Positions 34,420 to 58,634 are shown, counted from the stretch's first letter. The stretch: DNA of 64,000 bases from Macrostomum lignano (GCA_002269645.1 NIVC01003729.1:16216-80215), one strand, 5' to 3'. Notes: generated by a model not told the origin, from the sequence alone. Program-made: numbers and translations.

Positions 34420-35451
34420 AAAACACACCATCCAGCTGAGTCATTAAGCCCTACTCAACCAAAAACAACCAAAACTACTACTCACTCAGCTGAGCCACTC
34501 AATCCTACTCAACCGAAATACCCAGTCAGCTCAAAAGCTACTCACTCAGCTGAGTCACTCAATCCTACTCAACCGAAATACCCAGTCAGCTCAAAAGCTA
34601 CTCACTCAGCTGAGTCACTCAATCCTACTCAACCAAAACACCCCAGTCAGCTCAAAAGCTACTCACTCAGCTGAGTCACTCAATCCTACTCAACCGAAAC
34701 ACCCCAGTCAGCTCAAAAGCTACTCAATCAGCTGAGTCACTCAATCCTACTCAACCAAAACACCCCAGTCAGCTCAAAAGCTACTCAATCAGCTGAGTCA
34801 CTCAATCCTACTCAACCGAAATACCCAGTCAGCTCAAAAGCTACTCACTCAGCTGAGTCACTCAGTTCTACTCAACCGAAACACCCCAGTCAGCTCAAAA
34901 GCTACTCACTCAGCTGAGTCACTCAATCCTACTCAACCGAAACACCCCAGTCAGCTCAAAAGCTACTCACTCAGCTGAGTCACTCAATCCTACTCAACCG
35001 AAACACCCCAGTCAGCTCAAAAGCTACTCACTCAGCTGAGTCACTCAATCCTACTCAACCGAAACACCCCAGTCAGCTCAAAAGCTACTCACTCAGCTGA
35101 GTCACTCAATCCTACTCAACCGAAACACCCCAGTCAGCTCAAAAGCTACTCACTCAGCTGAGTCACTCAATCCTACTCAACCAAAACACCCCAGTCAGCT
35201 CAAAAGCTACTCACTCAGCTGAGTCACTCAATCCTACTCAACCAAAACACCCCAGTCAGCTCAAAAGCTACTCACTCAGCTGAGTCACTCAACCAAAACA
35301 CTCTAGTCAGCTCAAAAGCTACTCACTCAGCTGAGTCACTCAATCCTACTCAACCAAAACACCCCAGTCTACTCAAAAGCTACTCACTCAGCTGAGTCAC
35401 TCCATCCTACTCAACCAAAACACCCCAGTCAGCTCAAAAGCTACTCAATCA
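34420..35451. repeat. 60/61-bp minisatellite abutting the stop codon of trx copy A
   Basis: Lines 34501 and 34561 are identical (period 60). The unit carries the palindrome ACTCAGCTGAGT; about 17 units. Confidence 0.96.
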
Positions 35452-36203
35452 GTTGAGGAACTTCCTGCAGCTCACGGACCCGCAGTGACAGGCCACCTTG
35501 TCCTCCTCCTTATCAAACCGGTAATCGTACGTCAGCTCCTCTCCAGCCGCGATGTCCCGCCCAGCAACTATCAGAATTCGCTGGTCCATGACTCGAGTCA
35601 CGCAGTTTGGTGAGCAGCTGTGGTTGATGAAGCGCGCTGGGCCACCCTTCATGCTGGCGTCAATCACCCACTGCCAGTTCACCTTGAACAGGTAGCAGTC
35701 AATGTTGCGGCTCTGGTAGAATTTCTCCTTGGCCTCAGACAGGCTGGCTCTGATGAGCTCTCCAGTGTACTCAACTATGAACTCGGCCTTCGCAAACGGC
35801 CGCACAGCGAACAGGCCCAGGCCATGGATACTGGATGGTAGCACCTGGACTCTGCACTGCCAATGCTCACTGCGGGCCACACGAATCTGGTTGCGAACTG
35901 TGGCCACCGCAGCCTCCTCGCTGCACTGCTGCTCAACTGTCGTCACGGGCCTGCGGGCTGAGCTCAGCAGGAAGCTGAAGGTGCGCTTCAACTGCGAGTT
36001 GCCCGCTGAGGCCTCCGGCCTACTGGCTGCCTTGAACGGCTCTGAGCGGGCGCAGCCGCTGGCGTTTGGCGAAGACTCCTGCTTGCGCAGCTGCGCCCAG
36101 CGGTGGATCAGGTAGATGGGGGAGTAGCCGCTGCAGAATCCCAGCTGTTCCAGGCACCACACAACTCTGGGATGGACAATTCCTACTGAACTCCAGCCGT
36201 TGC
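35449..36203 (-). CDS. trx: Trithorax/KMT2A-B-like H3K4 methyltransferase copy A, last exon (FYRC end, WIN motif, SET, post-SET)
   Basis: GCARSEP WIN motif, IHGLGLF, EYTGELIR, RFINHSC, ELTYDY and CxCxxxxCRKFLN*. Acceptor CCCGCAG| at 36204, phase 1. Confidence 0.95.
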
Positions 36204-36417
36204 CTGCGGGAGTTAGGAATTAATGGAGGGGTGAGAAATTTACAATTAATTGATTCGTTAAAAGTGCACAGATCATGAACGCATAAGATCTGTGTGATGT
36301 ACTCGTAGACTATAAAATAAGGAAATATAAATGTTGTTAAAGTAAATAACCGGCATGCTTCAATTTTGGGGAGTGTGGACTTTTTTATAAATAGGTGACT
36401 TTGGCTTTCAGAGGGGG

Positions 36418-36980
36418 GTGCATGGGATTTGAGATGCATGGGATTTGAGATGCATGGGATTTGAGATGCATGGGATTTAGAATGCATGGGATTTGAGATG
36501 CATGGGATTTGAGATGCATGGGATTTAGAATGCATGGGATTTGAGATGCATGGGATTTGAGATGCATGGGATTTGAGATGCATGGGATTTGAGATGCATG
36601 GGATTTGAGATGCATGGGATTTGAGATGAATGGGATTTGAGATGCATGGGATTTGAGATGCATGGGATTTGAGATGCATGGGATTTGAGATGCATGGGAT
36701 TTGAGATGCATGGGATTTGAGATGCATGGGATTTGAGATGCATGGGATTTGAGATGCATGGGATTTGAGATGAATGGGATTTGAGATGCATGGGATTTGA
36801 GATGCATGGGATTTGAGATGCATGGGATTTGAGATGAATGGGATTTGGGATGCATGGGATTTGAGATGCATGGGATTTGAGATGAATGGGATTTGGGATG
36901 CATGGGATTTGGGATGCATGGGATTCGAGATGTTGGGATTTGAGATGAATGGGATTTGGGATGCATGGGATTTGGAATGT
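36418..36980. repeat. 16-bp minisatellite (GCATGGGATTTGAGAT) in the last intron of copy A
   Basis: Period 16 (36421 vs 36437). Confidence 0.96.
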
Positions 36981-37069
36981 AGATCTGATTACTAGCGAAA
37001 ATCTTGGCTATTTTATTGATTTCATACAGTGCAAAAGAGCCTGAATAAATTAACAAAATCAAAACTCAC

Positions 37070-38060
37070 CAACACGCAAAGTCAAACACTCAGCGGGAGC
37101 CTGCTCACTCCAGCACTCGCCCACCATCTGGCACAGCCGCCTCATCACCATGACTGGATGGGAGGCGCACAGTCGCAAGGACTCTTCGCGAGACGCCAGC
37201 ACAAAGCGCACCTTGCCAGACTCAGCCTGCAGTCTCCAGTCGTAGATGCTGATCTTGCCAGCCTCCCGGATGCTCCAGAACTGGCGCTGGGCCCTAAAGC
37301 CCACAGGCAGCAGCACGGTGCCCATGGAGCCGGACTCTGCACGCAGGCAGCCAAGCCGGGTGATCAACAGGCCGCCAATCCTGACGGTCACCTCATCAGG
37401 CGGCAGGGACACCTCGCAGAGGCTCTGGTCCGCTGCACCCACCACCAGCCGCTGGCACAACAGGCGGCCAAAGTCGCTGGGCGGAAGGTCGCAGCCTGCA
37501 AACTCTGCAATGTCGGCGCAGTCGCTGCAGCGGCACTCGCAGAGGTCGCTGAACTGCCAGCCAGACGTCAGGGCGCAGCCAAGGTGACAAACCCGAGGAC
37601 ACGACAGGCTCAGACAATCGATGCTCGCTCCCACCTTGCCGCACTCTGAGCACCTGTTGCCCCGAGCTCTGCGCACAGCAGCCCGAACTCCCTGAATGCA
37701 GTCGCTCTCGTCAACTCGAATCTCCGGCGAGAACAGCGCGCAGCCCGCGTGAATCCAGGAGGTCCGCGCGCTTGGCAGCAGCCGCCCCAGCACCGAGTCC
37801 TGCTTCCTCTGACCGCACAGCTCGCATTCGCCAGCTCCATCAACTGCAGTCGCCTCTCTCAGCTTCCTCACTGACAGCTCCCGGCACTCCTTCACCATCG
37901 AGCAGCTCAACGTGTCAGCGTCAACCGGCTCCGGGCGCTTCGGCGCTGCATCCAGGACCTCCGCGCGGAGATCAGCAAGGCGAAGCCACGAGAACAGCGC
38001 AGCAACTCCTTCTTCCAGGGCCGTTGACAGCAGCGCACAGTCCGGCAACTTCTTCGGAAT
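37070..38060 (-). CDS. trx: trx copy A exon: extended PHD (ePHD), FYRN and start of FYRC
   Basis: CELCGQR...WIHAGCALFSPE...CSECGKVGASIDC...CHLGCA, then VRIGGLLITRLG...LPVGFRAQRQFWS. Acceptor CCATCCACAG| at 38061, donor GTGAGT at 37069; 991 nt, phase 0 to phase 1. Confidence 0.92.
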
Positions 38061-38080
38061 CTGTGGATGGAGAGGTTGCT

Positions 38081-39174
38081 GGTGTCTGCTGCGGTCTGCT
38101 GCTAGTAGCAGAAAAGGATTGCTTATGTAGTGATCCGCTAGTTGGTGTTAGGCGTCGCACTTAGTCAGTCTGCCGCTGGTCAGCTTCCCGCTCCCTCTGG
38201 TCTGCCTGTTTGCTGTTCCCTTTTTTTCTTTTTTCTGCCTCCCTCTTTCCGTTTTCTGCGCTCTCGTTTGCTCCTGTCCTGTGGTCGCTGGTGGCCTGTT
38301 TCCCTTGTCATCATGCGAGCAGTCACATGACAAGTCTTGCCTCCTCGTAGTCTTCAAAGTGCAGTAAACATGTTTACTGTTGGTCCCTGTTTATGTGAGA
38401 GTCACGTGCCTAAGGCTCTTCCCTTCTCTAAGGAAAGGAGTGACTCATGTTTCTAAAAATAGACACTGCGTCACAGTATAGTGCACTCTGCCCGGAGACC
38501 CCAAGTGACGTCAGTTCTAAAAATAGAACAAAGTCACGAGGTCTTGTGCGTTGGGGCAGTGGAGAATCCAGCGCTATGAATATTGGACCCCCCCTTCACC
38601 CTTGTTTCTGTCAGGGATTGATTCATCATTCCAGTTGTTCATCGTTCTCTATGATTCTCTGTTTGAGTGTACGTTCAATTCACTGCTATTGGTCTGAGAC
38701 CCATCTGATGCCAACCCCAAAAGCACGATCTACTGACGAGACGCATTGTTCGTAAGCTGCAAATCTGCACATTGTGCTGTGTTCGCTCGACTTGTTTCTT
38801 TCGTCCCGACAGAAGCTCACCTCACCTAAGGCGGAGACGAGACCAGACGGACTGGTGGCAGCACTACCGACGCTACTAAAGAGTTACTAAGAAGGCTTCC
38901 GCAGGAAGAGGCTCGAGACTTAGAATTGCCACTCGTAAAGCTTCAGTGCCTAAATCGGGAAGCTAAAGCTCTCTACTTCACTTATTAATAGGCGGGGGTG
39001 CTTTTGGGAGTGCAATGGTCTGATGAGGATCTACTGCTAGAAGCAGAAAAGGAGGGCTTCTGGTCACGGTCTGCTTCTAGCAGTACTACAGAATGCTTCT
39101 GGTAGCCCAGGATTACTCTGAATCTGCCCCTGAACCTGAAGAGCGATTCGCTCAGCTAGGGGAAGAAGACTGCC
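38081..39174. other. 1.1-kb intronic segment present in copy A and absent from copy B
   Basis: The introns align at both ends (copy A 1231 bp, copy B 136 bp). The extra segment is bounded by TTGCT direct repeats at 38076-38080 and 39175-39179. Confidence 0.75.
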
Positions 39175-39291
39175 TTGCTTTTGGAAGTGCAATGGTTTGC
39201 TGAGGATCTACTACTAGGAGCAGAAAAGGAAGGCTTCTGCCTAGGGTCTGCGTCTGGCAGTAACAAAGAATGGTTCCCCTTCTCAGCTTAC

Positions 39292-41354
39292 CTTGCAGGC
39301 CTCGATGAGCTCAATGATGATGGCTTTGACCAGGTCGTGTCCCGAGCTGAACTCCTGGTACGGAGGCATCCTGCAGAAGATCTTCTCAGCCGCAGCCTCA
39401 TGCCTGGCCTCATCAATGTCGTCCAGGACGCCGTCCAGCTGCTGAGGCCGAGACGGCAGTCCGAGGCTCTCGCTCAGGGCGCGGATCCTGGCTCGGAGGT
39501 CCTTCACGCAGGCGGCCTTCAGAGCGTGGAAGCCCCGAGAGTCGCAGTCCCGACAGAAAAAGTCCAGCTGCTCGTTCACCAGGTACACGTGGTACAGCTC
39601 GTCATTGATGCCAGCGCAGGTGGCGTGCACCACATTCTTGCAGTCTGGGGTGGAGCACGCCAATGAATTGCCAATCAGAGAGGTGACCCGATGGCACTCG
39701 TGGCAAGTCACCTCCGTGCTCTCGCAGTGCTGGCACAAGTTGTCCCAGTCTGACCAGTCATCGCTGAATACTTTGCCGCAGTGCTTACAGGCTGCACAGT
39801 CGCAGCACAGCTGCCAGTCCTTCACGCTGTACCCTCGACTCTCTTCAAGACAGTCTGGATGGTAGGCAGCCCCGCACTTGATGCAGCTGCGACACGCTGT
39901 CCCAGACCGCTTGCACACTCGGCACACAAGGCAACGGGCGCATCGCCAAGGTGTCAGGCCGGACCACAGAGGCCGCTCGCATACAGACAGGCAGTACAGG
40001 TGAAACTGCTCAGTACAGCAGCTGCATCTCAGCATCAGATCCTGCTCTGCACCACCGCTACCGCACAATAAGCACTGCGGCTGGCTTATATCGGGCACAG
40101 ATCCCTTCCGACCGAATACGGCTACTCCATCACGCCAAGCCTCTTCTCTGTTCGACATCTCCTGCGGCACATCCACTGCCACGGATCCCGTGTCTCCAGT
40201 CACTGCCTGCACGCACTGCCGCAGTTGGCCCCGACTCACCGAGTCATACAGAGAGCCCATTCGCTGAGCTGCTTCAACTGATGGCCTCTTTATCTTTACA
40301 GCTTTCTTGCCACCTGATTCAGCAGAATCAGCCTGAGGCTTTGGTCGCTCTCCGTAGCGACTCACCCAGCTGGGAAAGCCCTTAGCAACTGAGTAGACAG
40401 ACAGATCGATGCCCGATTTGAGCACAGCAACAGCCCTGCACTTGGCACAGCCTCCGCAGTCGCACTCCAAATCGCTCTGCTGACTGGCTGAGCGAAGACT
40501 AGCAGTGAAGGCCGTGTAGCAGGTCTTGCAGATGTCAATCTTGCCCTGCAGCGAGATCAGCAGAGCTGCGCATCCACACACGCTGCAGTAAATCGATCCG
40601 CCCTCTGCCTCCTCAACACTCGAGTCCGCAATCTTCATCTTTGCCTTTCGCTTCGGCTCTGCCACCGCTGCAGTCTCCAGCTTCCCTGCCGCCTCATCAC
40701 CCGCCAGCTGCTCTTCCTTCACTGCCGCCGCCTCAGGCAGAGCGTCGCTCTTCCGCTTTCGCCGTCGCTGCTTTTTCTCTGCTGATGAGGCGCCGCCACT
40801 GCCGGCTGCTCCCTCGCTGGTCGATCGGCGCTTCTGTTTGCCCGCCTTCTTCTTTTGCTGCCGTGACGCCTCCTCCGCCATCACCGGCTGCTGCTGCTGC
40901 TGCGGCTGCTTTCGACGCTCCCCGCCGCTCTCCTCTTCGTCGATGAATCGGCGCGGCTTCTTCGACCTCCGCCTGCCGTCATCAGCTGGTGCCGTCTCGT
41001 CCGCTGCTTCAGAGGCCGCCGCTGCTGGTTCCGCCTTCACAGCCGCTGCCTCATCGCCTGCTGACTCTGCCACCGAATCTTCGGCTGCTGACTCTGCCGC
41101 CTCGGCCTTCTCCGGCTTGACGACCTCCGCGCACTCCTGGCCGCTCCGCTTCGCTGCGCTGTACACAACCACGCCGCACAGGGCTGCCATGTGCTTCTCT
41201 TCCAGGCGCTTCAGTCGCTCCGCCTTTGTGCCTCGCTTGTAAGTCGCATAGCGCTGGCCAGACTTCACCGACTCCTGCAGCACCCGCAGGCTCATGCTCT
41301 GGTGCAGGCGGGCAGTTCTCTTCTCGTTAATCTCCTCTTGTAGCCATGGCATGG
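39292..41354 (-). CDS. trx: trx copy A large exon: basic/acidic low-complexity region, nuclear-receptor-like C4 zinc finger, PHD1-3, bromodomain-like remnant
   Basis: PHD1 CLLCGSGG...CCTEQFHLYCL and PHD3 VHATCAGINDELY match the MLL1/Trx PHD patterns. Acceptor TACCTGCAG| at 41355, donor AAG|GTAAGC at 39291. Confidence 0.93.
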
Positions 41355-41582
41355 CTGCAGGTAATATTAAGTCCTCGAATATTATTCAGAAGCATTAATT
41401 AAAGGTTTGACTTACAAGACGGTTATACTGATACAAGTTCAAACATAAATTCCATGTCTTTAAAGAGTTTATTGGCATACAGTCTTTATAAAAATAGCAG
41501 TTTTGAAAACTAAAAGCATTCCCTGATTATACACGCGCAACACCTGGCTGACCCAGCCAAGATCAGTTGCAAAAGTGCCTAC

Positions 41583-41595
41583 CCGAAGAAGACAT
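41583..41595 (-). CDS. trx: Possible micro first exon of trx copy A (ATG TCT TCT TCG G)
   Basis: ATG followed by donor |GTAGGC in phase 1, compatible with the acceptor at 41355 (MSSSAMPWLQ...). It is short and could be chance; Met 41352 is the alternative start. Confidence 0.35.
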
Positions 41596-44304
41596 AGTAC
41601 TAATTAGATGACGAAGCATTTATCCTTAATAAGACAGTCATAGTTACTCCTGTTATTAACCCAAAAGTGCATAAAATTTGCTTTAGGATTTCTTTCACAC
41701 GTAAGCTGCATTTTTGGTCAAAAAGGAAGTTGGATAGCCAGTGTAAATCAGGTGGGTTGCACATTTATGCCCCTTATTGATGAAAAGACAGTTGATATTG
41801 CATTTGGGGTACTCATGCAAATAAAAAATGTTTCAACTTATTGTATTTCTATTGAAGCTCAATTTGCAATAGGTAAATATAATGACTATTCAATTGTGTT
41901 ACTATGATTATTTTAGTTACTTCTTTTACTAAGAAGTAGATAATTTTGCAAGCTGGCTTATTCTGTGTAAAGTGAATATCATTAATAGCCTAAAGGCCTG
42001 TAAGATCTATCATGGGCACTATCTACTTCTATCATACACTTCATGGTAATGGTATATATAACCCTGTATCTGAATAATAAGAATGCAAAAGAAATGAAAG
42101 TTTTTTTTCCTTATACTCAACTTTTTTATGAATTTTGAATGTATCAAATTTTTTTCTTCAATTATTTTAGCATTTTTCTAAAATTGAAAACCTCAAATAG
42201 CACTTTTAAAACTTTTATATGCATATGCTTGTATAGAAGCAAAATCATTATATTGCCAAATTCATATATTTGTTTACATGAGAAGCTGAAAAAGTTCAAA
42301 TTACTCATAAAAGATAGGCCTATACTTTTTATTCTTTACAATCAACCAAATTCAATGAAGGAAACAATTATAGAGATAACTAGGAAAATGCTACAACTGC
42401 TGAAGCAGTTAGCTATCAAAAGAAAAAGAATTCTTAAGAGCAAGGCTACAAACAAAAGACAATAGAAAAATAAATCATCAATTCATAATCAGACTCAGAG
42501 GCAAAATCTAAATTAGAACAGCTTAATTGGTTAAACAAAATTTGTAAAGAAGGCCATTTTGAGCATGGAAATGATTTAAAACTAAGAGCAGAAATAGATA
42601 GAAATCAGAGGGCACACATCCTATGCTGCCAGCTGCCCTGGGGCCTGTTGCACCTCCCTATCTCGAATCTGCTACTGCATGATAATTTAATGTTTTGCCA
42701 CGCTTAAGCCTAAAGGCAAGGCCCAATCACCCTGTCATCAAACGAGCCATCAAATCACACGACCAATGTAACACAAAAGGACAAAATTTGATGTAAATGT
42801 TGATCACAAAATTGGTCTAAGTCTAATGATTTGCACACCACTCCCCGCTTAAAAAATTGAAGCCGATTCCTGGTTAAATTCCAAGTTAAACTGTGAATAT
42901 TCAAGGTTTATCTAGGAATGAGAGTAAAGATCGCTTCCAAGTTAAACTGGCGTTTGAATTCATTGCACTTTAACAAAGCACGATCAAAAAAGTTGAAAAA
43001 ATGGCTGTTAAACTTAGCTAACTGTAAATTAATTTCAAAGTTTGAAGTTAAAATATTAGGCTGAACTTCTGTACACACATAAATGAAACGCAGCATAAAA
43101 AAGTAATAGATTTGAATGTTATCGCGCGCTGCATGCTCAGTCTATAATTTTTATTTTACAAGCGCGAGCATTCACTTGTACATAAATGAACTATCGAATT
43201 ATCGCGCGAAATCTTTTGGGACATAACTTTCAGACCATAATCTATAAGATTTTACTACAGCCGCATCTGGGGCATGAGTTTAAAATTTTGATGCGACTGA
43301 GACGCGGCTAGCAACATGGAAGTGCGCATTCTCAGTTTTTGCCTCAATCTCGAAATTAGCTTTCTTTTCATTTCTACTATTTAAAGGGTATTAATAACCA
43401 AAAAAATTAAAGATCTAAGCGATAGGTGTGCAACTATACTACTAATTACTGTTTAGTCCTTGGCTTGTGTGTCTTGCTATTTATAAAGAATAGATATTTT
43501 TATTTAATACATCTTTTAAATTCTATCTTGAAACTTTCATAGTAAAAGACACATTGAACACGAATTATGTTTGATAGTTATACTAATATATATATTAGCA
43601 AAATTTTAATTGCATTATTCTAATAAAAAATAAAGTTAGAAAAATCTGTAAAGAAGCATTACTTTTTGTTTCTCTATCCTCAATTTTAGCAGCCAAAACA
43701 TGTAGTTTTTAAATGTAAGAACTATCTCAGCTTTTAGGTAGCTTCATTTTAAAGCGATACTTTTTGTACATATTTGAAATAAACAACTAAAATGGTTCAC
43801 AGTTTTATAGTCACTCAAAATCCTGCTTATCAATGAAAATTCTTTTTAAGGCATCTAGAATTCAGTATTAAATCATTATAAATCAATAAATAACTTTAAA
43901 TCATTAAATCACAAAATTAACCTGTTTGCATGTACTTGCATTTGCAGTTTGAGCTCCCATCATTTGATTTTTATCATCAGTAGTATTTTGTCCTTGTTAT
44001 TTTTTCATAATTTTTTTTAATTGTGATTATTGACTTCTAGCTTTATCATGTCAGATAAAAAGCAATGTATAAGCTGTTGGGCATGTAGAAGCCGTCAAAA
44101 GCGAGCATAATTTTCTTGAATAAAATAGGTATATTTGCCTGGAATAAGTAGAAAGTTTAAGAAGTACTAACTGTAAAGTTGTAAAACTGCCAAAGTTGGT
44201 AGAAGAAACACAAAAGTTAATAAAAAATGTGCTTCACAAAAATAGTGCAGTACCATCGAAAAATATGACTAATTTTATTTTCACTGTCCTTGCAGTTATT
44301 TCAG

Positions 44305-45485: not shown

Positions 45486-46747
45486 AAGCTAAGTGTGTCA
45501 GCTAACTGCATTCATTTGCAAAAAAATCTTATAACATAAAAAAATTTGGATATAAATGCGATTCCCAAAAACACACTGCTTTTCTGTTTCTTATTTTCTT
45601 CAGTTTCTACTTATAGACATATTGTGAATACATTCACGCATTCGCTCTTTCCCACGCGCATCTCCAACTGATCACTGTTCATTTTTCTTGCATTATGGTT
45701 AAAATTAAATAAAGAAATAATCGAGATTGGAGACCGTGTAAAAATTAAGAAAAAATTATACGTTTTTGTCATTAAACAGACTCGTATCCGTGATAAGAGT
45801 TATGTACTTTTGTTAAATTTAATAGTGTGAGAGCTAGCGTTGCTACGGCGAGCAAAAAACGGCTGAGATTTGGCGTCAGGGCTTCTAAATATGAAATTCC
45901 ACATTTACTACTACTGCAAAAAACTTTGCGCACTACTAACCGCAGTAGATAAATTCGGACATAACTCCTAAATTTCCGCGACGCTCATTAAATTAAACAA
46001 TTCTTCCGTCTTCCTACTTTTACTAGGAATTTCTTCCGACTTACCTGATTGGCTGGCTAACATGGAAGAATATAGTGATTTTAAACCATGAATATGGCTT
46101 TTATTTTCTATGCGGGTCGACTCAAGCTTTTGGTGGCAACCGTGAATGAAATTCTTATGATCGAATAAATAAATTAGCAAAAATACAGAATATTAACTAA
46201 CGTCTTTTATATATTTTTGCTTAAAATTTAACAGCTTTTACTGTTTAGACTATGCCTAGCTAACTAAGCTTCTAACAGTTAACTTTTGTTTAAAACATTT
46301 TGTATTTGTGTACCTGTTCAAAAAGATTTTTTTTTATTTAAATTTTAGCTACTTGCGCGCGACAGTCTTTTTCTTAAGGTCTGCCATTATAAATAGAGGG
46401 CCTAGTGCTATAAATAGGCAGTGCTTGTCCCATGGTCCTCTGCCAATAACAAAAATATGCACATGGCGCTATGTCAATAATGTGGCTCAGACAAAAATTA
46501 TCATATTCCAAATTAATTGTCCTGTGTTTAACTGAAATAAAGACAAGACATAGACTAATTTAACTAAATTGACATATTTAAATAATTGGCTCCACCCTCC
46601 ACTGTAGAAGATAAATTTTCTAAGTGGTAAGGTCTAGACTAAAGGCTCAAAAACAATATATGCTTCGTTAAAATAGTCGTATATGACTTTCAAGACTTTG
46701 TAGTATAATGACTAGGCCTAATCATTAGGCTAATGTATATAATAAAT

Positions 46748-47149
46748 AAAGGTCGGATGGGATCCAAATCCTGTTGCCGAAATCTCGGGATCCCGAGGAA
46801 AATTTAATTCCTGCGGGACCAGAATCCCGACCCTAAAAAACTTGAGATTCAGGAGCAGGTCTTTTGATTAAAAATTCATAGAATTAGGCCTAGTGATTAC
46901 TTGAGGGTATTTTGCTTTAACTTATACTTGTTATATTATTTAATTTGTTGGTTACAAAACTTCATATCAATTTCATTGTGTTTTACTTCTTGATCTTGAC
47001 AATCTTTTCTCAATTTTTTTTAACTTTATATCAATACACTACACTACACTAAAAGACCTAATCCCGATTCTCAAATCCCGATCCCAATCCCGAGAAAAAA
47101 TATTTCCCCATCCTGATCCTGCCCTAAGATTTCAATCCCGTCCAACCTC
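46748..47149. mobile_element. MITE, hAT-like
   Basis: Imperfect TIRs (AAGGTCGGATGGGATCCAAATC / GATTTCAATCCCGTCCAACCTC), subterminal ATCCCG repeats and an 8-bp flanking repeat TAATAATA (46740-46747, 47150-47157). Confidence 0.7.
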
Positions 47150-49111
47150 TAATAATAAAGGTAAGAGCAGTGTTGCTACAGCTAAATGCTCAAAATTTGA
47201 ATTTTCTGCACAAGTGTGCAAATAGGACCTAATGTGCAAGACCCAAAGACCCTAAATTTCTATGCAAATTAGACTTTTTTGGATTGTTGACAATCTAACA
47301 GTAGCAAAATGTTCAATTTCCACTTCAAATAATGATACATTGATATTTCACTTGTTAGTTATGGCTACTCTTTGTTTGCACTTAAAATTAAACACACTAT
47401 TTTTATACTATTTTTTTATTTTTAAGCATTAAGCATTTGATTTATCATTTTATTCATTTAGCCTAGAAAAGAATTTTTTGGGATTTGAAAGTTTTGAAAG
47501 TTGTGACTAAGAAAAATTTATGACAAAAAAAATTAGACTGAATTTCTTCATTTGTTTCTTTCATTTTACTAACAATAATTAGCTTACATTTCTACCTGCA
47601 CCATTTTTTTGCCTTGCGCAAAAAATGATTTTGTTGTAAATGGCAGTACTAATGAGTAGGTCTAAGTGAGTGTTGAGACTAAGACTGCAACTACAACTAC
47701 AAAGCCTTAACTGAGATGGCTGCTCTGAGTAGATTGATATTTGATAGGTCTACAATATTACAAATTTATAATATAACATATAAGTATTAATTAGGCATAT
47801 TAAGTTTCAATTGACATTATATATGTATAGGCTACTATATATGCCTAGGGCTATTATGGCCTATATAGGGTTAGGCCTAGCTAATAGGCCTAGCTAATTA
47901 TATAAAGGCACAATAAAAGGTTGCATCTAAAAAGATATAGGAGTATGAAACCATATTTTTTAATGCACCATATTCTTTTTAGTTTTTTAAGTAGCAATCC
48001 TACTAGGCTACTATTCCTAGTAGTACTAGGAAAGCAACATGTAGTTTAATATAAGATAATTGCAATACTAGAAAAAATATAATTTTTTATTTTAAAAATG
48101 CTGATAAATGAACAAGTGTCAATGAGTAGATAAGATAAAAGATGTTAATATTTGATAAATAGAACATAGAGTGAATAAAATGTATTTTCAAAGTTTGAAT
48201 TTTATATATACATAAACCAAAGGCAACAAGATAAAAATTGTTGAAATAAAATGTTTTTATCATTGATATTAATAACCTTAGAATTATTTTGGTGGCACTC
48301 TGCAAACTGGTAGACTAGTTAAAGCTATGATCTAATGTAGATCCTTTTTACTTTGCCAAATGAACCTATGAAAAAGAGGCATTTTTGAAAATTAGACTTG
48401 CATCTTTGTTGGCATTGTTATCTATATTCAAATATAAAGTTAAAGAAATTGTGAAAATTATCTAGGCCTATTTGGATTTCTTTGAGTTTGCAATTGACCA
48501 TAGGCCCTACATTAGATAAGACTTGTAAGTCATTAAAAGTCCTTTGATTTTCAGGTCTTTAAAATTGAAAGCCCTCATGTATTTTCAAAAAGAATAGAAT
48601 ATATTTAAATGAGTTAAAATTCTTTAAAATACATTTTAAATTTTTGAAGTTTACATTATAAGTGAATTTATTCACTCACAAAAACTAATTAATTCATTTA
48701 TTAATGTTCTTTGTCCACTCACTGATATCATCAGTAAGTGGGCATTTTGTGCTTTTTTTAATAATATGATGCCTTTCACAAAAATAATTTCAATCAGGCT
48801 CCTATAGTAAAACATTTCATTTTAAAAGAAAGACTTCTATTTTTGGTACAAGAAAAAGGCCCTCCACACATATAAAGGACAAAGTTTAGACAAAGTACAA
48901 AACTTATAGTTTCACTATTTGTGTTTTTATTAAAAGTATTAAATATTTATCAAGTAATGTGTAAAAAGATCTAGCCAAAACAGTTTGATTTTCCATAAGC
49001 ACTGCAGTGAATGTATATTAGAACTATAAATATCAAACAATCAAAAAAGTGAGAATGTATTTTTTCATTTGAAACTACCCCCGTGCCTCACTGCCTCCTA
49101 ATTCCAGTCCA

Positions 49112-51437
49112 ATGTCTGAACTACCAGCATCGCCAGAGTTATCAGGCTCTACAAAAAGAGGCTTGGAAATTGACTGGCACGCTTTCATCAGCGGTCAGAC
49201 GAAGTCGAAGCCAAATCTGAACCAGCCTCAAGAGATCCCTCGCCAGTTGCTGGCGACGCTGCCGCTGAAAACACTGTGGCTGCCACTGCACCCAGCCGAG
49301 GTCGCGGTAGGCCCCGTAAAACTGCCGGTACACCGCCAAGCAGAAGGTTTTCAGTGCTGAAAAACGACTTCAAAAGCTGCTAGAATTCAAAGCCGAAGTT
49401 AACGAAAAGAAGACGACCCGCCTGCACCAGAGCATGAGCCTGCGGGTGCTGCAGGAGTCTGTGAAGTCTGGCCAGCGCTATGCGGCTTACAAGCGAGGCA
49501 CAAAGGCGGAGCGACTGAAGCGCCTGGAAGAGAAGCACATGGCAGCCCTGTGCGGCGTGGTTGTGTACAGCGCAGCGAAGCGGAGCGGCCAGGAGAGCGC
49601 GGAGGTCGTCAAGCCAGAGGAGGCCGAGGCGGCAGAGTCAGCAGCCGAAGATTCGGTGGCAGAGTCAGCAGGCGATGAGGCAGCGGCTGTGAAGGCGGAA
49701 CCAGCAGCGGCGGCCTCTGAAGCAGCGGACGAGACGGCACCAGCTGATGACGGCAGGCGGAGGTCGAAGAAGCCGCGCCGATTCATCGACGAAGAGGAGA
49801 GCGGCGGGGAGCGTCGAAAGCAGCCGCAGCAGCAGCAGCAGCCGGTGATGGCGGAGGAGGCGTCACGGCAGCAAAAGAAGAAGGCGGGCAAACAGAAGCG
49901 CCGATCGACCAGCGAGGGAGCAGCCGGCAGTGGCGGCGCCTCATCAGCAGAGAAAAAGCAGCGACGGCGAAAGCGGAAGAGCGACGCTCTGCCTGAGGCG
50001 GCGGCAGTGAAGGAAGAGCAGCTGGCGGGTGATGAGGCGGCAGGGAAGCTGGAGACTGCAGCGGTGGCAGAGCCGAAGCGAAAGGCAAAGATGAAGATTG
50101 CGGACTCGAGTGTTGAGGAGGCAGAGGGCGGATCGATTTACTGCAGCGTGTGTGGATGCGCAGCTCTGCTGATCTCGCTGCAGGGCAAGATTGACATCTG
50201 CAAGACCTGCTACACGGCCTTCACTGCTAGTCTTCGCTCAGCCAGTCAGCAGAGCGATTTGGAGTGCGACTGCGGAGGCTGTGCCAAGTGCAGGGCTGTT
50301 GCTGTGCTCAAATCGGGCATCGATCTGTCTGTCTACTCAGTTGCTAAGGGCTTTCCCAGCTGGGTGAGTCGCTACGGAGAGCGACCAAAGCCTCAGGCTG
50401 ATTCTGCTGAATCAGGTGGCAAGAAAGCTGTAAAGATAAAGAGGCCATCAGTTGAAGCAGCTCAGCGAATGGGCTCTCTGTATGACTCGGTGAGTCGGGG
50501 CCAACTGCGGCAGTGCGTGCAGGCAGTGACTGGAGACACGGGATCCGTGGCAGTGGATGTGCCGCAGGAGATGTCGAACAGAGAAGAGGCTTGGCGTGAT
50601 GGAGTAGCCGTATTCGGTCGGAAGGGATCTGTGCCCGATATAAGCCAGCCGCAGTGCTTATTGTGCGGTAGCGGTGGTGCAGAGCAGGATCTGATGCTGA
50701 GATGCAGCTGCTGTACTGAGCAGTTTCACCTGTACTGCCTGTCTGTATGCGAGCGGCCTCTGTGGTCCGGCCTGACACCTTGGCGATGCGCCCGTTGCCT
50801 TGTGTGCCGAGTGTGCAAGCGGTCTGGGACAGCGTGTCGCAGCTGCATCAAGTGCGGGGCTGCCTACCATCCAGACTGTCTTGAAGAGAGTCGAGGGTAC
50901 AGCGTGAAGGACTGGCAGCTGTGCTGCGACTGTGCAGCCTGTAAGCACTGCGGCAAAGTATTCAGCGATGACTGGTCAGACTGGGACAACTTGTGCCAGC
51001 ACTGCGAGAGCACCGAGGTGACTTGCCACGAGTGTCATCGGGTCACCTCTCTGATTGGCAATTCATTGGCGTGCTCCACCCCAGACTGCAAGAATGTGGT
51101 GCACGCCACCTGCGCTGGCATCAATGACGAGCTGTACCACGTGTACCTGGTGAACGAGCAGCTGGACTTTTTCTGTCGGGACTGCGACTCTCGGGGCTTC
51201 CACGCTCTGAAGGCCGCCTGCGTGAAGGACCTCCGAGCCAGGATCCGCGCCCTGAGCGAGAGCCTCGGACTGCCGTCTCGGCCTCAGCAGCTGGACGGCG
51301 TCCTGGACGACATTGATGAGGCCAGGCATGAGGCTGCGGCTGAGAAGATCTTCTGCAGGATGCCTCCGTACCAGGAGTTCAGCTCGGGACACGACCTGGT
51401 CAAAGCCATCATCATTGAGCTCATCGAGGCCTGCAAG
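49112..51437 (+). CDS. trx: trx copy B large exon, with an N-terminal AT-hook extension split by two -1 frameshifts
   Basis: From 49434 it is nearly identical to copy A. Upstream frames give MSELPASPEL..., then ...PSRGRGRPRK (AT-hook). Adding 2 nt makes the length 2328 nt (776 codons). Donor AAG|GTAAGC at 51438. Confidence 0.88.
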
Positions 51438-51573
51438 GTAAGCTGAGACGGGGGAACCATTCTTTGTTACTTCTAGAAGCAGACCCTAGGCAGAAGCCTT
51501 CCTTTTCTGCTCCTAGTAGCAGATCCTCAGCAAACCATTGCAATTCCAGAAGCAACCTCCTCTCCATCCACAG

Positions 51574-52560
51574 ATCCCTGACAAGCTGCCGGACTGTGCG
51601 CTGCTGTCAACGGCCCTAGACAAAGGAGTTGCTGCGCTGTTCTCGTGGCTTCGCCTTGCTGATCTCCGCGCGGAGGTCCTGGATGCAGCGCCAAGATGCC
51701 CGAGCCGGTGGACGCTGACGCGTTGAGCTGCTCGATGATGAAGGAGTGCCGGAGCTGTCAGTGAGGAAGCTGAGAGAGGCGACTGCAGTTGATGGAGCTG
51801 GCGAATGCGAGCTGTGCGGTCAGAGGAAGCAGGACTCGGTGCTCGGGCGGCTGCTGCCAAGCGCGCGGACCTCCTGGATTCACGCGGGCTGCGCGCTGTT
51901 CTCGCCGGAGATTCGAGTTGACGAGAGCGACTGCATTCAGGGAGTTCGGGCTGCTGTGCGCAGAGCTCGGGGCAACAGGTGCTCAGAGTGCGGCAAGGTG
52001 GGAGCGAGCATCGATGTCTGAGCCTGTCGTGTCCTCGGGTTTGTCACCTTGGCTGCGCCCTGACGTCTGGCTGGCAGTTCAGCGACCTCTGCGAGTGCCG
52101 CTGCAGCGACTGCGCCGACATTGCAGAGTTTGCAGGCTGCGACCTTCCGCCCAGCGACTTTGGCCGCCTGTTGTGCCAGCGGCTGGTGGTGGGTGCAGCG
52201 GACCAGAGCCTCTGCGAGGTGTCCCTGCCGCCTGATGAGGTGACCGTCAGGATTGGCGGCCTGTTGATCACCCGGCTTGGCTGCCTGCGTGCAGAGTCCG
52301 GCTCCATGGGCACCGTGCTGCTGCCTGTGGCTTTAGGGCCCAGCGCCAGTTCTGGAGCATCCGGGAGGCTGGCAAGATCAGCATCTACGACTGGAGACTG
52401 CAGGCTGAGGCTGGCAAGGTGCGCTTTGTGCTGGCGTCTCGCGAAGAGTCCTTGCGACTGTGCGCCTCCCATCCAGTCACGGTGATGAGGCGGCTGTGCC
52501 AGATGGTGGGCGAGTGCTGGACAGCGCAGGTCAACGGGCGGAAGCCGCTGCTACTGGCAG
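51574..52560 (+). CDS. trx: trx copy B ePHD-FYRN-FYRC exon carrying four single-base deletions relative to copy A
   Basis: Acceptor CCATCCACAG| at 51573, donor |GTGAGA at 52561. It is 987 nt vs 991 nt in copy A, with deletions near 51693, 51751, 52015 and 52329. Confidence 0.85.
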
Positions 52561-52719
52561 GTGAGAGATTTGTCCTGCTGTAGCCTTGATCTGAACTTAT
52601 TGAATGTTGGAAGCATTCCTATTCAAATGGACTTGACAGTGTAGCCAGTTAGTCCTCCGTAACTAATAAACACAACTCATGCTCGATTCAAATCTAATGT
52701 ATCACATCTCCAATTCAAT

Positions 52720-53000
52720 GCATCCTAAATCCCAAATCCTGTAATATTCACATTTATAATCCTACATCCCAAATCCTGTAATATTCACATCTCTAATCCC
52801 CTACATCCCAAATCCTGTAATATTCACATCTCTAATCCCCTACATCCCAAATCCTGTAATATTCACATCTCTAATCCCCTGCATCCCAAATCCTGTAATA
52901 TTCACATCTCTAATCCCCTACATCCGAAATCCTGTAATATTCACATTTCTGATCCCCTACATCCGAAATCCTGTAATATTCAAATCTCTAATCCCCTACA
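52720..53000. repeat. 39-bp minisatellite (CATCCCAAATCCTGTAATATTCACATCTCTAATCCCCTA), resuming briefly at about 54075-54150
   Basis: Period 39 (52765 vs 52804); the array is interrupted by an insertion of about 1.07 kb. Confidence 0.9.
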
Positions 53001-54065
53001 CCTGTTGGAAAAGTGATGCACCTGTGTATATAGGCTTAAAAGGTGAGCGAGGTGCACAAAAGAGGCACTTTGGTGGCCTATTTCGTGCATGTTTTGGAAA
53101 GGCACATGAGTGCACCTTTTATGCCTAAGTGTCACCAATATTTTTGAAAAGAGGCATGAAAGGTATAAAATCGGTGAAGTGGTCAGGCAGTGGGTGAATT
53201 CTCAATTTTGATTGGTTGCGGCGGTAGGGGCAGTAAAGGTGTGTAAGGGGCACTGGAGGTGCGCAAAAGGTGAAGAGTAGGCTCACAAGTGACGGGAGGT
53301 GCAGAAGGGGCACAGAAAGTGCATGAAAGGTGAATTTGAGGTGGGCGTACATGATTCTAATTATACTACTTCTTTCAGTTTGCCTGAGTAAATAGGTGCA
53401 TACAGGTGCATTTCCAAAACAAGCACGAAATAGGCCACTAAATATAAATGTCTCTTTTGTGCACCTCGCTCACCTTTTATGCCTACGCAGTTGCATAACT
53501 TTCCAATGGGAATTAGTAATAAAAATTAACTGAGAGTTACATACTCGTATATTGCAGGCACAGATTGAACATAGAAAAGCTTTATTTACACCTATACTAA
53601 TCGCGGCTATCCCCTTCCTGATTCTGGCCAACCACGATAGTAAACATTCCCTATACCGATAAGTTCCAATGACTTTCAAATACTGAGGAAAAGTTGCGAA
53701 AAGTGGTGAAAAGTTTTGCATCAGTGTGGAAAAGTTTCGAATCTTTCCAAAGAATAGTGAGGAAAAGTAGCAAAGAAAAGTTGGAATGCCCCTTGCATTG
53801 CTTCTACACCTAAAGTGCCCACTGTGCACCTTTTGTTCACCTTTTGTGCCTCCAATGCACACACTGCACCTTTAATGCACCTAACTCCCCTATGACACCT
53901 GTGCCCCTACCGCATATTTCATGCCTTAAATTCACCTTTTGACCCTGCAGAGGCACTCAGGTGAACACGCGGTGCACAAGTGGAACAAAATAGGCATAAG
54001 AGAGGCGAAAGTGAGGCAAAAGGTGCAAAACTCTTCACCTTTTATGCCTACTTTAGAAAATCAAA
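53001..54065. mobile_element. Foldback/MITE-like non-autonomous insertion rich in GCACCT/AGGTGC motifs
   Basis: Inverted arms of about 80 bp at 53031-53110 and 53405-53485. CACCTTTTATGCCTA recurs near 53113, 53471 and 54036, and the segment splits the 39-bp array. Confidence 0.6.
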
Positions 54066-54233
54066 ATCCAACGGGACATCCCAAATCCTAAATCCTGTAA
54101 TATTCACATCTCTAATCTCTTCCATTCCAAATCCCAAATCCTATACATTTAGATTCGCAATGCAGTGCTTACTAAATGATATTTCCTCATTCCCTAGTAT
54201 CTACCACCTAGTATTTCTCCCTCAATTTCACAG

Positions 54234-54988
54234 GCAACGGCTGGAGCTCAGTGGGAATTGTCCATCCCAGAGTTGTGTGGTGCGTGGAGCAGCTGGGATT
54301 CTGCCGCGGCTACTCTCCTAAGTATTTAATCCACCGCTGGGCGCAGCTGCGCAAGCAGGAGTCTTCGCCAAACGCCAGCGGCTGCGCCCGCTCAGAGCCG
54401 TTCAAGGCAGCCAGCAGGCCGGAGGCTGCAGCAGGCAACTCGCAGTTGAAGCGCACCTTCAGCTTCCTGCTGAGCTCAGCCCGCAGGCCCGTGACGACAG
54501 TTGAGCAGCAGTGCAGCGAGGAGGCTGCGGTGGTCACAGTGCGCAACCAGATTCGTGTGGCCCGCAGTGAGCATTGGCAGTGCAGAGTCCAGGTGCTACC
54601 ATCCAGTATCCATGGCCTGGGCCTGTTCGCTGTGCGGCCGTTTGCGAAGGCCGAGTTCATAGTTGAGTACACTGGAGAGCTCATCAGAGCCAGCCTGTCT
54701 GAGGCCAAGGAGAAATTCTACCAGAGCCGCAACATTGACTGCTACCTGTTCAAGGTGAACTGGCAGTGGGTGATTGACGCCAGCATGAAGGGTGGCCCAG
54801 CGCGCTTCATCAACCACAGCTGCTCACCAAACTGCGTGACTCGAGTCATGGACCAGCGAATTCTGATTGTTGCTGGGCGGGACATCGCGGCTGGAGAGGA
54901 GCTGACGTACGATTACCGGTTTGATAAGGAGGAGGACAAGGTGGCCTGTCACTGCGGGTCCGTGAGCTGCAGGAAGTTCCTCAACTGA
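54234..54988 (+). CDS. trx: trx copy B last exon (FYRC end, WIN motif, SET, post-SET), intact
   Basis: Acceptor TTTCACAG| at 54233; 755 nt as in copy A; SET and post-SET protein sequence identical to copy A. Confidence 0.95.
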
Positions 54989-55525
54989 TTGAGTAGCTTT
55001 TGAGCTGACTGGGTGTTTTGGTTGAGTAGGATTGAGTGACTCAGCTGAGTGAGTAGCTTTTGAGCTGACTGGGGTGTTTCGGTTGAGTAGGATTGAGTGA
55101 CTCAGCTGAGTGAGTAGCTTTTGAGCTGACTGGGGTGTTTTGGTTGAGTAGGATGGAGTGACTCAGCTGAGTAAGTAGCTTTTGAGCTGACTGGGGTGTT
55201 TCGGTTGAGTAGGATTGAGTGACTCAGCTGAGTGAGTAGCTTTTCAGCTGACTGGGGTGTTTTGGTTGAGTAGGATTGAGCGACTCAGCTGAGTGAGTAG
55301 CTTTTGAGCTGACTGGGTGTTTTGGTTGAGTAGGATTGAGCGACTCAGCTGAGTGAGTAACTTTTGAGCTGACTGGGGTGTTTTGGTTGAGTAACTCAGC
55401 TGAGTGAGTAGCTTTTGAGCTGACTGGGGTGTTTCGTTTGAGTAGGATTGAGTGACTCAGCTGATTGAGTAGCTTCTGAGCTGACTGGGGTGTTTGGTTG
55501 AGCGACTCAGCTGATTGAGTAGCCA
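54985..55525. repeat. 60/61-bp minisatellite after the stop of copy B (inverse of the 34420-35451 array, about 9 units)
   Basis: Same unit, reverse-complemented; shorter than in copy A. Confidence 0.95.
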
Positions 55526-58501: not shown

Positions 58502-58634
58502 GTTCTGCCCATTCCGCTGAATCCTGGGACCGATTTCATGAGCAACTGGTAAATTACCAGTTAGCAGCAGCTACAATAACCGCGGATATTCAGCAGTCTG
58601 CTAAAATCTGATTTCATGAAGGAACTGGTAAATA

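What the first reader, a model, noticed from the sequence alone, without database searches (positions are those of the whole stretch)
35449..54988. Head-to-head inverted pair of Trithorax genes with a gene-conversion signature
Two trx copies diverge from a 7.7-kb AT-rich spacer. Exon cores are almost identical: only three amino-acid changes in about 670 aa of the large exon, and an identical SET domain. Divergence rises sharply at exon edges (IPKK/IPDK, ALEEG/ALDKG, SPIYL/SPKYL with many synonymous changes), and the last intron, N-termini and flanks barely align. A recent duplication would be uniformly similar. This mosaic fits old inverted paralogs homogenised by arm-to-arm conversion, as in palindromic gene pairs. 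Most invertebrates have a single trx.
Basis: partly seen in the sequence, partly recalled or inferred. Interest (0 to 1): 0.75.

Follow-up and report, generated by a model that had tools for sequence, protein, structure and literature searches.

The report
Inverted KMT2 gene pair, exon-limited conversion
Two head-to-head copies of an MLL-family histone methyltransferase gene in the flatworm Macrostomum lignano are old duplicates whose exon interiors are kept identical by copying between the copies, a real but ordinary case of a well-known process.

Summary
The window is Macrostomum lignano contig NIVC01003729.1. It carries two divergently oriented copies of a roughly 1,250-1,350 aa PHD/ePHD/FYRN/SET gene around an 8,050-bp AT-rich spacer. 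Homology falls into three exon-centred blocks.

Synonymous divergence between copy A and an intact copy B is 0, 0.005 and 0 in the exon cores. At the exon edges it is 0.13-0.62, and it is saturated in the last 13 codons of exon 2. Introns and the spacer do not align.

A second contig carries the same inverted pair. A third, B-type copy differs from B by dS 0.027 in the cores where A and B are identical. That copy also has an A-like tract running into intron 1. This tree incongruence supports DNA-templated gene conversion after the subgenomes split.

- Copy B as assembled has six 1-bp deletions. An overlapping contig lacks them, so they are probably consensus errors.
- The 3' flanks do align, through a shared 61-bp minisatellite.
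- The gene looks MLL3/4 (Trr)-like rather than Trithorax proper.

M. lignano is a neopolyploid, so extra copies are expected. This is a known kind of event and of modest interest.

The parts
39292..41352 (-). Copy A exon 1. ATG at 41352 (MPWLQEEINEK...), second Met at 41295. Encodes a low-complexity region and three PHD fingers. It lacks the roughly 93-aa AT-hook N-terminus of B.
   Evidence: ORF; donor AAG|GTAAGC; Pfam PHD; NCBI PAA50043.1 maps to window 35154-41382
38061..39291 (-). Copy A intron 1 (1,231 nt). The first roughly 117 nt and last roughly 67 nt are homologous to B's 136-nt intron. Positions 38128-39174 are A-specific sequence flanked by a roughly 65-bp duplication.
37070..38060 (-). 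Copy A exon 2 (ePHD and FYRN). The last 13 codons (37070-37108) are unrelated to those of B.
36204..37069 (-). Copy A intron 2, mostly a 16-bp minisatellite (36419-36974). It does not align with B's intron 2.
35449..36203 (-). Copy A exon 3 (end of FYRC, Win motif GCARSEP, SET, post-SET, stop codon).
34478..35457 (.). 61-bp minisatellite (about 16 copies) directly 3' of copy A. It is homologous to the array 3' of B.
41340..49389 (.). Non-homologous AT-rich spacer between the arms (8,050 nt). On the sister contig it carries an extra 11.2 kb at about window 43120.
49112..51437 (+). Copy B exon 1. Probable ATG at 49112 (MSELPASPELSG..., AT-hook RGRGRPRK). Homology to A begins at 49390. Carries 1-bp deletions at 49198 and 49333 relative to sister contigs.
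51438..51573 (+). Copy B intron 1 (136 nt).
51574..52560 (+). Copy B exon 2. Four private 1-bp deletions (about 51702, 51751, 52015, 52329), three of them in G or T runs, break the frame. The NCBI model PAA50044.1 (718 aa) stops at 51726.
52561..54233 (+). Copy B intron 2 (1,673 nt), containing a 39-bp minisatellite at 52724-53000.
54234..54988 (+). Copy B exon 3 (end of FYRC, Win motif, SET, post-SET, stop codon).
54980..55523 (.). 61-bp minisatellite (about 9 copies) directly 3' of copy B.
39716..41108 (.). Longest stretch with no difference between A and B in the window (1,393 bp; partner 49621-51013). Against the intact B on the sister contig the run is 1,821 bp (41112-39292).

Best explanation
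An old inverted duplication of an MLL-family (KMT2) gene produced a full-length copy B and a 5'-truncated copy A that lacks the AT-hook N-terminus. Neutral sequence (introns, spacer, the last 13 codons of exon 2) has diverged beyond alignment and been reshaped by minisatellites and insertions.

The exon interiors are repeatedly overwritten by non-reciprocal, DNA-templated gene conversion between the two copies in cis.

Inferred mechanism: break repair uses the inverted paralog as template. Heteroduplex can only form inside uninterrupted homology, so tracts start and end within the three exon-centred blocks. Block interiors are converted often and block margins rarely, which gives the divergence gradient at the exon edges. 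Unrelated introns act as barriers.

What is shown: the mosaic, the tree incongruence, and tract boundaries that differ between subgenome copies. What is inferred: the repair mechanism, the direction of individual events, and that both copies are functional.
For: 1. Synonymous divergence, A against the intact B2: 0 over 423 synonymous sites (exon 1 core), 0.005 (exon 2 core) and 0 (SET region). The edges give 0.13, 0.18 and 0.62, and the exon 2 tail is saturated.
2. The third B-type copy, B3 (NIVC01001821.1), is B-like at the edges, introns and flanks. It differs from B2 by dS 0.027 in the cores where A equals B2. So A and B coalesce later than B2 and B3 do in the cores and earlier at the edges. 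A run of 19 consecutive polymorphic sites has A equal to B2 (permutation P<=5e-6).
3. The 5' edge of exon 2 alternates between the two tree patterns in blocks of roughly 10-50 bp, and B2 against B3 dS there is 0.27, ten times the baseline.
4. B3's intron 1 is A-like for about 190 nt, including 72 nt of A-specific sequence. The template was therefore DNA, and this is an independent tract in another subgenome copy.
5. At 41109, 39715, 39694, 35903 and 35569, window B equals B3 while B2 equals A. All four haplotypes occur at 41133/41109, 24 bp apart.
6. The same head-to-head pair is on NIVC01001822.1.
7. The assembly does keep single-base differences in these cores, both for B3 and for window B.
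Against: - All sequences come from one PacBio read set and one assembly. That assembly was polished with Illumina and RNA-seq reads, in a genome where 93% of read pairs map to multiple loci. No raw reads were examined.
- The A-type partner of B3 is not available because of a scaffold gap, so homogenisation within each locus could not be tested in the third block.
- No site groups window A with window B against A' with B', because the two A copies are identical.
- One zero-to-6% transition lies within 12 nt of the exon 1 donor site. This would also fit an exon-specific process.
- No related species could be examined.
Confidence: 0.8

Rival explanations
1. Assembly or polishing artefact. Read correction in Canu, or Pilon polishing with multi-mapping Illumina and RNA-seq reads, overwrote real differences in the exon cores. 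Alternatively, the second copy is a false duplication.
For: - The assembly was polished with RNA-seq as well as DNA reads, which acts only on exons.
- 93% of read pairs map to multiple loci.
- This region has about one indel error per 350 bp, and an unmerged 16.6-kb contig overlap.
Against: - The same pipeline preserved 18 substitutions in the exon 1 core of B3. It also preserved private single-base variants of window B, which the overlapping contig shares.
- Exon edges, which are equally covered by RNA-seq, remain divergent.
- Homology extends past the annotated transcript end into the 61-bp array.
- The pair is assembled twice, with different spacers of 8 kb and 19 kb.
- A-type and B-type proteins from the older ML2 assembly show the same pattern.
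Confidence: 0.09
2. A recent whole-gene duplication, with fast turnover of introns and flanks by minisatellites and insertions, and no conversion.
For: - The introns are dominated by minisatellites of different unit lengths.
- A's intron 1 has a 1,047-bp insertion.
- The cores are identical.
Against: - It cannot explain point-substitution dS of 0.13-0.62 at the exon edges, or 13 unrelated codons, next to cores with dS 0.
- It cannot explain A and B being closer in the cores than two B-type subgenome copies, when both types are present in the third block.
Confidence: 0.03
3. Homogenisation templated by RNA or cDNA. Spliced transcripts of one copy serve as the repair template for the other, which would explain why homology tracks the exons.
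For: - Homology blocks coincide with exons.
- One boundary lies at the exon 1 donor site.
Against: - Exon ends are the least homogenised parts.
- The introns are retained.
- B3's A-like tract runs about 190 nt into intron 1.
- The 3' homology extends beyond the annotated transcript.
Confidence: 0.04
4. Purifying selection at the nucleotide level (codon usage, RNA structure) keeps the cores identical without any exchange.
For: The cores encode the conserved PHD, ePHD and SET domains.
Against: - The largest identical stretch also covers a low-complexity, poorly conserved N-terminal region.
- B3 carries 11 synonymous and 7 non-synonymous changes in the same core, so these sites are free to vary.
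Confidence: 0.02

Closest known systems
Arm-to-arm gene conversion in large palindromes (for example human Y-chromosome ampliconic palindromes; from my own knowledge)
   Same: Inverted gene copies in cis around a unique spacer, with sequence identity maintained by intrachromosomal non-reciprocal exchange.
   Different: Here the arms are not uniformly identical. Homology is three blocks of 1-2 kb separated by unrelated introns. The spacer (8 kb) is as long as an arm, and identity decays inside the exons.
Partial (mosaic) conversion between old duplicated genes, where tracts are confined to coding regions because the flanks have diverged (for example primate gamma-globin genes; theory of Teshima and Innan; from my own knowledge)
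   Same: Synonymous divergence near zero in the converted segment, high divergence outside it, gene trees that disagree between segments, and introns or flanks acting as homology barriers.
   Different: Inverted rather than tandem orientation. It is replicated in at least two subgenome copies of a neopolyploid, with different tract ends.
KMT2C/KMT2D (MLL3/4), Drosophila Trr plus Lpt, and planarian trr-1/trr-2 plus LPT (Hubert et al. 2013, PMC3549883)
   Same: - ePHD-FYRN-FYRC-Win-SET-postSET is collinear with KMT2D.
- FYRN and FYRC are adjacent near SET.
- The PHD cluster resembles that of KMT2D/KMT2C.
- Flatworms already have two Trr-type paralogs.
   Different: - The protein is compact (about 1,350 aa).
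- The PHD cluster and the catalytic half sit in one gene, not split as in Drosophila and Schmidtea.
- SET-only scores barely separate KMT2C/D from KMT2A/B (139 against 136 bits).
- Database names of trematode hits say 'trithorax' or 'MLL'.
Three-copy paralogous blocks of the M. lignano Mlig_3_7 assembly (S, L1 and L2 subgenomes; PMC10733133)
   Same: The locus exists in about three versions. Substitution differences run from about 0.1-0.3% (window contig against NIVC01001822.1) to about 2% (third block), with large indels.
   Different: The A/B inverted duplication is a much older, local duplication nested inside each block.

Membership tests
KMT2 (SET1/MLL) H3K4 methyltransferases | C-terminal SET plus post-SET domain of the KMT2 type | tested here: met
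   Pfam SET at 1.7e-25. The best PDB matches are all KMT2A-D and SET1, at 118-139 bits.
KMT2 (SET1/MLL) H3K4 methyltransferases | WDR5-interaction (Win) motif upstream of SET | tested here: met
   GCARSEP aligns to the identical GCARSEP of KMT2D in the 9yl3_K alignment. Binding itself was not tested.
KMT2 (SET1/MLL) H3K4 methyltransferases | FYRN and FYRC domains | tested here: inconclusive
   FYRN scores 26.1 bits against a cut-off of 24 on the exon alone, and 23.8 on the full protein. FYRC is not called by Pfam, but the region aligns to the FYRC part of KMT2D.
Trithorax / KMT2A-KMT2B (MLL1/2) | FYRN and FYRC far apart, separated by a long region containing the taspase site | tested here: not met
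   FYRN ends about 185 aa before SET. The ePHD-to-SET span equals that of KMT2D (490 against 491 residues).
Trithorax / KMT2A-KMT2B (MLL1/2) | CXXC zinc finger, and/or a bromodomain between PHD3 and the ePHD | tested here: inconclusive
   No Pfam zf-CXXC or Bromodomain hit at E<=1. No PDB hit to the MLL1 PHD3-bromodomain. The single-sequence AlphaFold model of the linker was too poor to use (pLDDT 39.5). Planarian MLL1/2 also lacks the bromodomain.
Trithorax-related / KMT2C-KMT2D (MLL3/4, Trr plus Lpt) | [quoted passage not shown] | tested here: met
Trithorax-related / KMT2C-KMT2D (MLL3/4, Trr plus Lpt) | PHD cluster of the MLL3/4 type | tested here: met
   The best PDB hits for exon 1 are KMT2D (4.6e-12) and MLL3 PHD (2ysm, 1.5e-6). 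There is no KMT2A hit.
Trithorax-related / KMT2C-KMT2D (MLL3/4, Trr plus Lpt) | Placement within the Trr/MLL3/4 clade in a phylogeny | not tested
   No labelled KMT2C/D reference set was available offline. SET-only bit scores (139.4 for KMT2C against 136.1 for KMT2A) are not decisive.
Interlocus gene conversion between paralogs | Identical tracts longer than chance, given the polymorphic sites | tested here: met
   Uniform-placement and Sawyer-type permutation tests, P<=5e-6.
Interlocus gene conversion between paralogs | Tree incongruence between tract and flanks, using a third sequence | tested here: met
   Cores give ((A,B2),B3). Edges, introns and flanks give ((B2,B3),A).
Interlocus gene conversion between paralogs | Homogenisation at synonymous sites, so not explained by selection on the protein | tested here: met
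   One synonymous difference in 716 core sites against 34 in 182 edge sites.
Interlocus gene conversion between paralogs | Confirmation on raw reads or an independent assembly at the DNA level | not testable with these tools
   Only Mlig_3_7 DNA and ML2-derived proteins were reachable.
Classical palindrome (Y-chromosome type) | Long arms that are near-identical along their whole length | tested here: not met
   Identity falls to unalignable in intron 2 and most of intron 1.

The most novel reading that the evidence does not exclude
The pair is a functional division of labour kept in step by conversion. Copy B is a full-length enzyme with an AT-hook N-terminus. Copy A is a 5'-truncated enzyme without the AT-hook and with its own start, possibly a trans-spliced 5' end. 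Conversion keeps their PHD/ePHD/SET machinery identical while the N-termini, a 13-codon linker and their regulation stay distinct. Each of the three subgenomes runs this independently, which would make the locus a natural system for measuring interlocus conversion rates after genome doubling.
Probability: 0.3. Interest if true: 0.45.

Novelty: new member of a known kind. Interest (0 to 1): 0.3.

Why it matters
- It is a clean, quantifiable example of exon-confined concerted evolution, with the divergence gradient at homology-block margins that theory predicts.
- It is replicated across subgenome copies of a recent polyploid, with different tract ends, so conversion can be timed against genome doubling.
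- It warns that gene trees and dS-based dating of M. lignano paralogs can be badly misled.
- It shows that near-identical paralogs keep uncorrected homopolymer errors after polishing. Here that truncated the annotated product of copy B from about 1,350 aa to 718 aa.
- It indicates that Macrostomum encodes the PHD cluster and the catalytic half of an MLL3/4-like enzyme in one compact gene. In planarians and flies these are split between two genes.

Tried and rejected
- A single-sequence AlphaFold2 model of the PHD3-to-ePHD linker, made to look for a bromodomain, was unusable (pLDDT 39.5). No fold search was run.
- Looking up the ML2-derived A-type and B-type proteins in the contig index, for independent DNA or transcript contigs, found nothing.
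- Two homolog searches found no Macrostomum relatives outside M. lignano, so copy number in sister species could not be assessed.
- The A-type partner of B3 could not be reached. The scaffold has an N-gap and a Ty3/gypsy-like element 2.2 kb upstream of B3. The A-type fragment on NIVC01001126.1 holds only the last 286 bp of exon 3.
- No site groups window A with window B against A' with B', because the two A copies are identical. That test was uninformative rather than negative.
- SET-only bit scores do not separate KMT2C/D from KMT2A/B.
- A GC bias of the shared alleles in the exon 1 core (11 strong against 6 weak, counted by eye) is not significant.
- Reading copy B as a pseudogene was considered and set aside. 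Its six frameshifts are absent from an overlapping contig of the same haplotype, which has its own different indels.
Full report
WHAT THE WINDOW IS

The window matches bases 16216-80215 of Macrostomum lignano contig NIVC01003729.1 (assembly Mlig_3_7, GCA_002269645.1). The 36.6 kb that I could compare directly (window 25154-61726) is identical, and the window's last base corresponds to the end of that contig. Positions 1-28440 are a 25-bp satellite, followed by several minisatellites.

The finding lies in an inverted repeat. Arm A is about 34478-41339 and arm B about 49390-55523. They are separated by 8,050 nt of AT-rich, non-homologous spacer.

GENE MODELS

Copy A (minus strand):
- exon 1, 41352-39292
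- exon 2, 38060-37070
- exon 3, 36203-35449

Copy B (plus strand):
- exon 1, 49112-51437
- exon 2, 51574-52560
- exon 3, 54234-54988

Splice sites are canonical: AAG|GTAAGC, CACAG|AT and CAG|GC. Pfam finds PHD, ePHD (zf-HC5HC2H), FYRN and SET.

NCBI annotates A as PAA50043.1 (1,273 aa). It annotates B in this contig as a truncated 718-aa product, PAA50044.1.

B-type proteins from sister contigs start about 93 aa further upstream, at MSELPASPELSG..., and include an AT-hook-like RGRGRPRK. A has no counterpart. Homology to B ends at 41339, and A's reading frame opens at the ATG at 41352, just after a CCTGCAG acceptor-like site. A is therefore a 5'-truncated copy.

CHECKING THE OBSERVATION

Every specific claim holds: three amino-acid changes in the large exon, an identical SET domain, and the listed edge substitutions.

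Differences cluster strongly.
- Exon 1 has 14 differences in 41336-41109, then none for 1,393 bp.
- Exon 3 has 12 of its 19 differences in the first 95 nt.
- The last 13 codons of exon 2 are unrelated: SEQAPAECLTLRV against TAQVNGRKPLLLA.
- Intron 2 and most of intron 1 do not align.

- B as assembled carries six 1-bp deletions in coding sequence.
- The 3' flanks share a 61-bp minisatellite.
- The first roughly 117 nt of intron 1 align at about 94%.

ARE B'S FRAMESHIFTS REAL?

Probably not. NIVC01001068.1 overlaps window 47377-64000. It differs by 20 mismatches and 49 gap openings. In the stretch checked base by base (47372-55000) most discrepancies are single-base indels, many of them in homopolymer runs. 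It lacks all six deletions and has its own, different ones. The B copy on NIVC01001822.1 is intact at 1,351 aa.

The assembly is a PacBio/Canu assembly polished with Pilon. In near-identical paralogs, short reads can map to the error-free copy instead, which would leave such errors uncorrected. That last step is my inference.

RELATED COPIES

NIVC01001822.1 carries the same head-to-head pair, with A' (1,274 aa) and B' (1,351 aa, called B2 below). It is 99.6-99.7% identical across the arms and spacer, and has an extra 11.2 kb in the spacer.

NIVC01001821.1 carries a third, more divergent B-type copy, B3. NIVC01001126.1 ends in an A-type 3' fragment whose flank is about 97.5% identical to A's.

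This fits the published picture of Mlig_3_7. About 70% of the assembly lies in three-copy paralogous blocks with 1.9-2.4% SNP divergence (PMC10733133). Both A-type and B-type sequence exist in the third block, so the A/B duplication predates the split of the blocks.

THE TEST FOR CONVERSION

Nei-Gojobori estimates of dS for A against the intact B2:

| Segment | dS |
|---|---|
| exon 1, 5' edge | 0.13 |
| exon 1 core (423 synonymous sites) | 0 |
| exon 2, 5' edge | 0.18 |
| exon 2 core | 0.005 |
| exon 2 tail | saturated |
| exon 3, 5' edge | 0.62 |
| exon 3, middle | 0.08 |
| SET region | 0 |

B2 against B3 gives dS 0.027 in the same cores. B3 has 11 synonymous changes, 7 non-synonymous changes and a 3-bp deletion in the exon 1 core, so these sites are free to vary.

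In the cores, A and B2 coalesce more recently than B2 and B3. At the edges, introns and flanks the order is reversed.

- A run of 19 consecutive polymorphic sites has A equal to B2, from 41109 to 39616 (permutation P<=5e-6).
- The longest identical runs are non-random in each exon (P<=5e-6).
- Synonymous differences, edges against cores, give Fisher P=5.5e-24.

FINER STRUCTURE

- In the 5' edge of exon 2 the two tree patterns alternate in blocks of roughly 10-50 bp. B2 against B3 dS there is 0.27, ten times the baseline. This suggests that B in the window lineage was partly overwritten where B3 kept older sequence.
- At 41109, 39715, 39694, 35903 and 35569, window B and B3 share one state while B2 has A's state.
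- Sites 41133 and 41109, 24 bp apart, show all four haplotypes.
- B3's intron 1 is A-like for about 190 nt, including 72 nt found otherwise only in A. This shows an independent tract in another block. It also shows a DNA template rather than a cDNA template.

MECHANISM (INFERRED)

Repair of breaks uses the inverted paralog in cis and resolves without crossover. Tracts need uninterrupted homology on both sides. Block interiors are therefore converted often and block margins rarely, which gives the observed gradient. Introns that lost homology through minisatellite turnover and insertion act as barriers.

The two haplotypes have collinear spacers, so there is no sign of a crossover-driven inversion.

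RIVAL EXPLANATIONS

An assembly or polishing artefact is the serious rival. Polishing used RNA-seq as well as DNA reads, and most reads map to multiple loci.

Against it:
- The same pipeline kept B3's core differences and window B's private variants.
- The exon edges stay divergent.
- Homology extends beyond the annotated transcript.
- The pair is assembled twice, with different spacers.
- ML2-derived proteins show the same A and B types.

Three other rivals fail: a recent duplication with fast intron turnover, nucleotide-level selection, and cDNA-templated repair.

WHICH FAMILY

The protein is a KMT2 enzyme. Several features point to the Trr/MLL3/4 branch rather than Trithorax proper.
- It aligns collinearly with a KMT2D construct (9yl3_K) from the ePHD through FYRN and FYRC to SET, 490 against 491 residues. 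The GCARSEP Win motif is identical.
- Its PHD cluster best matches KMT2D and MLL3.
- FYRN and FYRC adjacent near SET is described as common to all Trr/MLL3/4 members (PMC3549883).

SET alone is not decisive (139 against 136 bits). Database names of trematode hits say 'trithorax' or 'MLL'. No phylogeny was built. Planarians already have two Trr-type genes.

VERDICT

The conversion interpretation is well supported, at about 0.8. The gene name and the rarity argument are not supported. Gene conversion between inverted paralogs is a known phenomenon, and extra gene copies are the rule in this neopolyploid. This is a good new example of a known kind, not a new kind.

Noticed in passing
window 1-28440: A 28.4-kb array of a 25-bp satellite (GAGTGCTTAACTGCAGGTGTCTGTA, about 1,154 copies, 92% matches) with strong constant GC and AT skew. 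The sister contig region that was fetched has only a few kb of it.
   Followed up: partly
window 28756-29757, 30429-31360, 36419-36974, 52724-53000, 56308-56908, 61421-61780, 62852-63458: A dense series of unrelated minisatellites with units of 23, 24, 16, 39, 30, 21 and 62 bp. Two of them make up most of the non-homologous intron 2 of the two gene copies.
   Followed up: partly
window 47377-64000 and L006 1-16672 (NIVC01001068.1): Two contigs of the same assembly overlap by 16.6 kb at 99.4% identity (20 mismatches, 49 gap openings). In the stretch checked base by base most discrepancies are single-base indels, many in homopolymer runs. This gives a local indel error rate of about 1 per 350 bp and shows an unmerged redundancy at a contig end.
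   Followed up: yes
window 49434-51726: The NCBI protein PAA50044.1 (718 aa) for copy B is truncated at the first assembly frameshift. The true product is probably about 1,355 aa, starting at 49112.
   Followed up: yes
window 32987-33397 (+) and 58730-59032 (-): Open reading frames with Tc1/mariner-type transposase motifs (DWPAQSPDLNPIENLW, WPSRSPDMNPIEHVW) lie outside both arms in opposite orientation. They do not align with each other at the DNA level.
   Followed up: no
window about 43120; NIVC01001822.1 record about 43960-55145: The sister haplotype has an 11.2-kb insertion in the spacer. It carries a long minisatellite and ORFs of 795 aa and 156 aa. Judged by eye only, the 156-aa ORF has a ubiquitin-hydrolase-like C-terminus. 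Probably a mobile element.
   Followed up: partly
L005 1-8054 (NIVC01001821.1): A scaffold gap (run of N) lies 2.2 kb upstream of the third B-type copy. Beyond it is a Ty3/gypsy-like gag-pol element on the minus strand, identified by eye from the ORF translations. This hides any A-type partner.
   Followed up: partly
window 38128-39174: Copy A's intron 1 holds 1,047 bp absent from B, flanked by a direct duplication of about 65 bp, with a third, 82%-identical copy at 38996-39099. B3 retains the first 72 bp of it, so B's short intron may be a deletion rather than A's long intron an insertion.
   Followed up: partly
window 60123-60488 (+): A small gene (121 aa in sister-contig annotation; the ORF begins MPTVSEPNQQQLQQQQGG...) lies about 5 kb downstream of copy B. 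It is conserved downstream of all B-type copies.
   Followed up: no
window 44739-45089 (+): The only sizeable ORF in the GC-richer middle of the spacer (116 aa). It was not searched against any family library.
   Followed up: no
copies A and B, whole protein: The PHD cluster and the ePHD-FYR-SET catalytic half are encoded in one compact gene. In Drosophila and Schmidtea the MLL3/4 function is split between Lpt and Trr (PMC3549883).
   Followed up: partly
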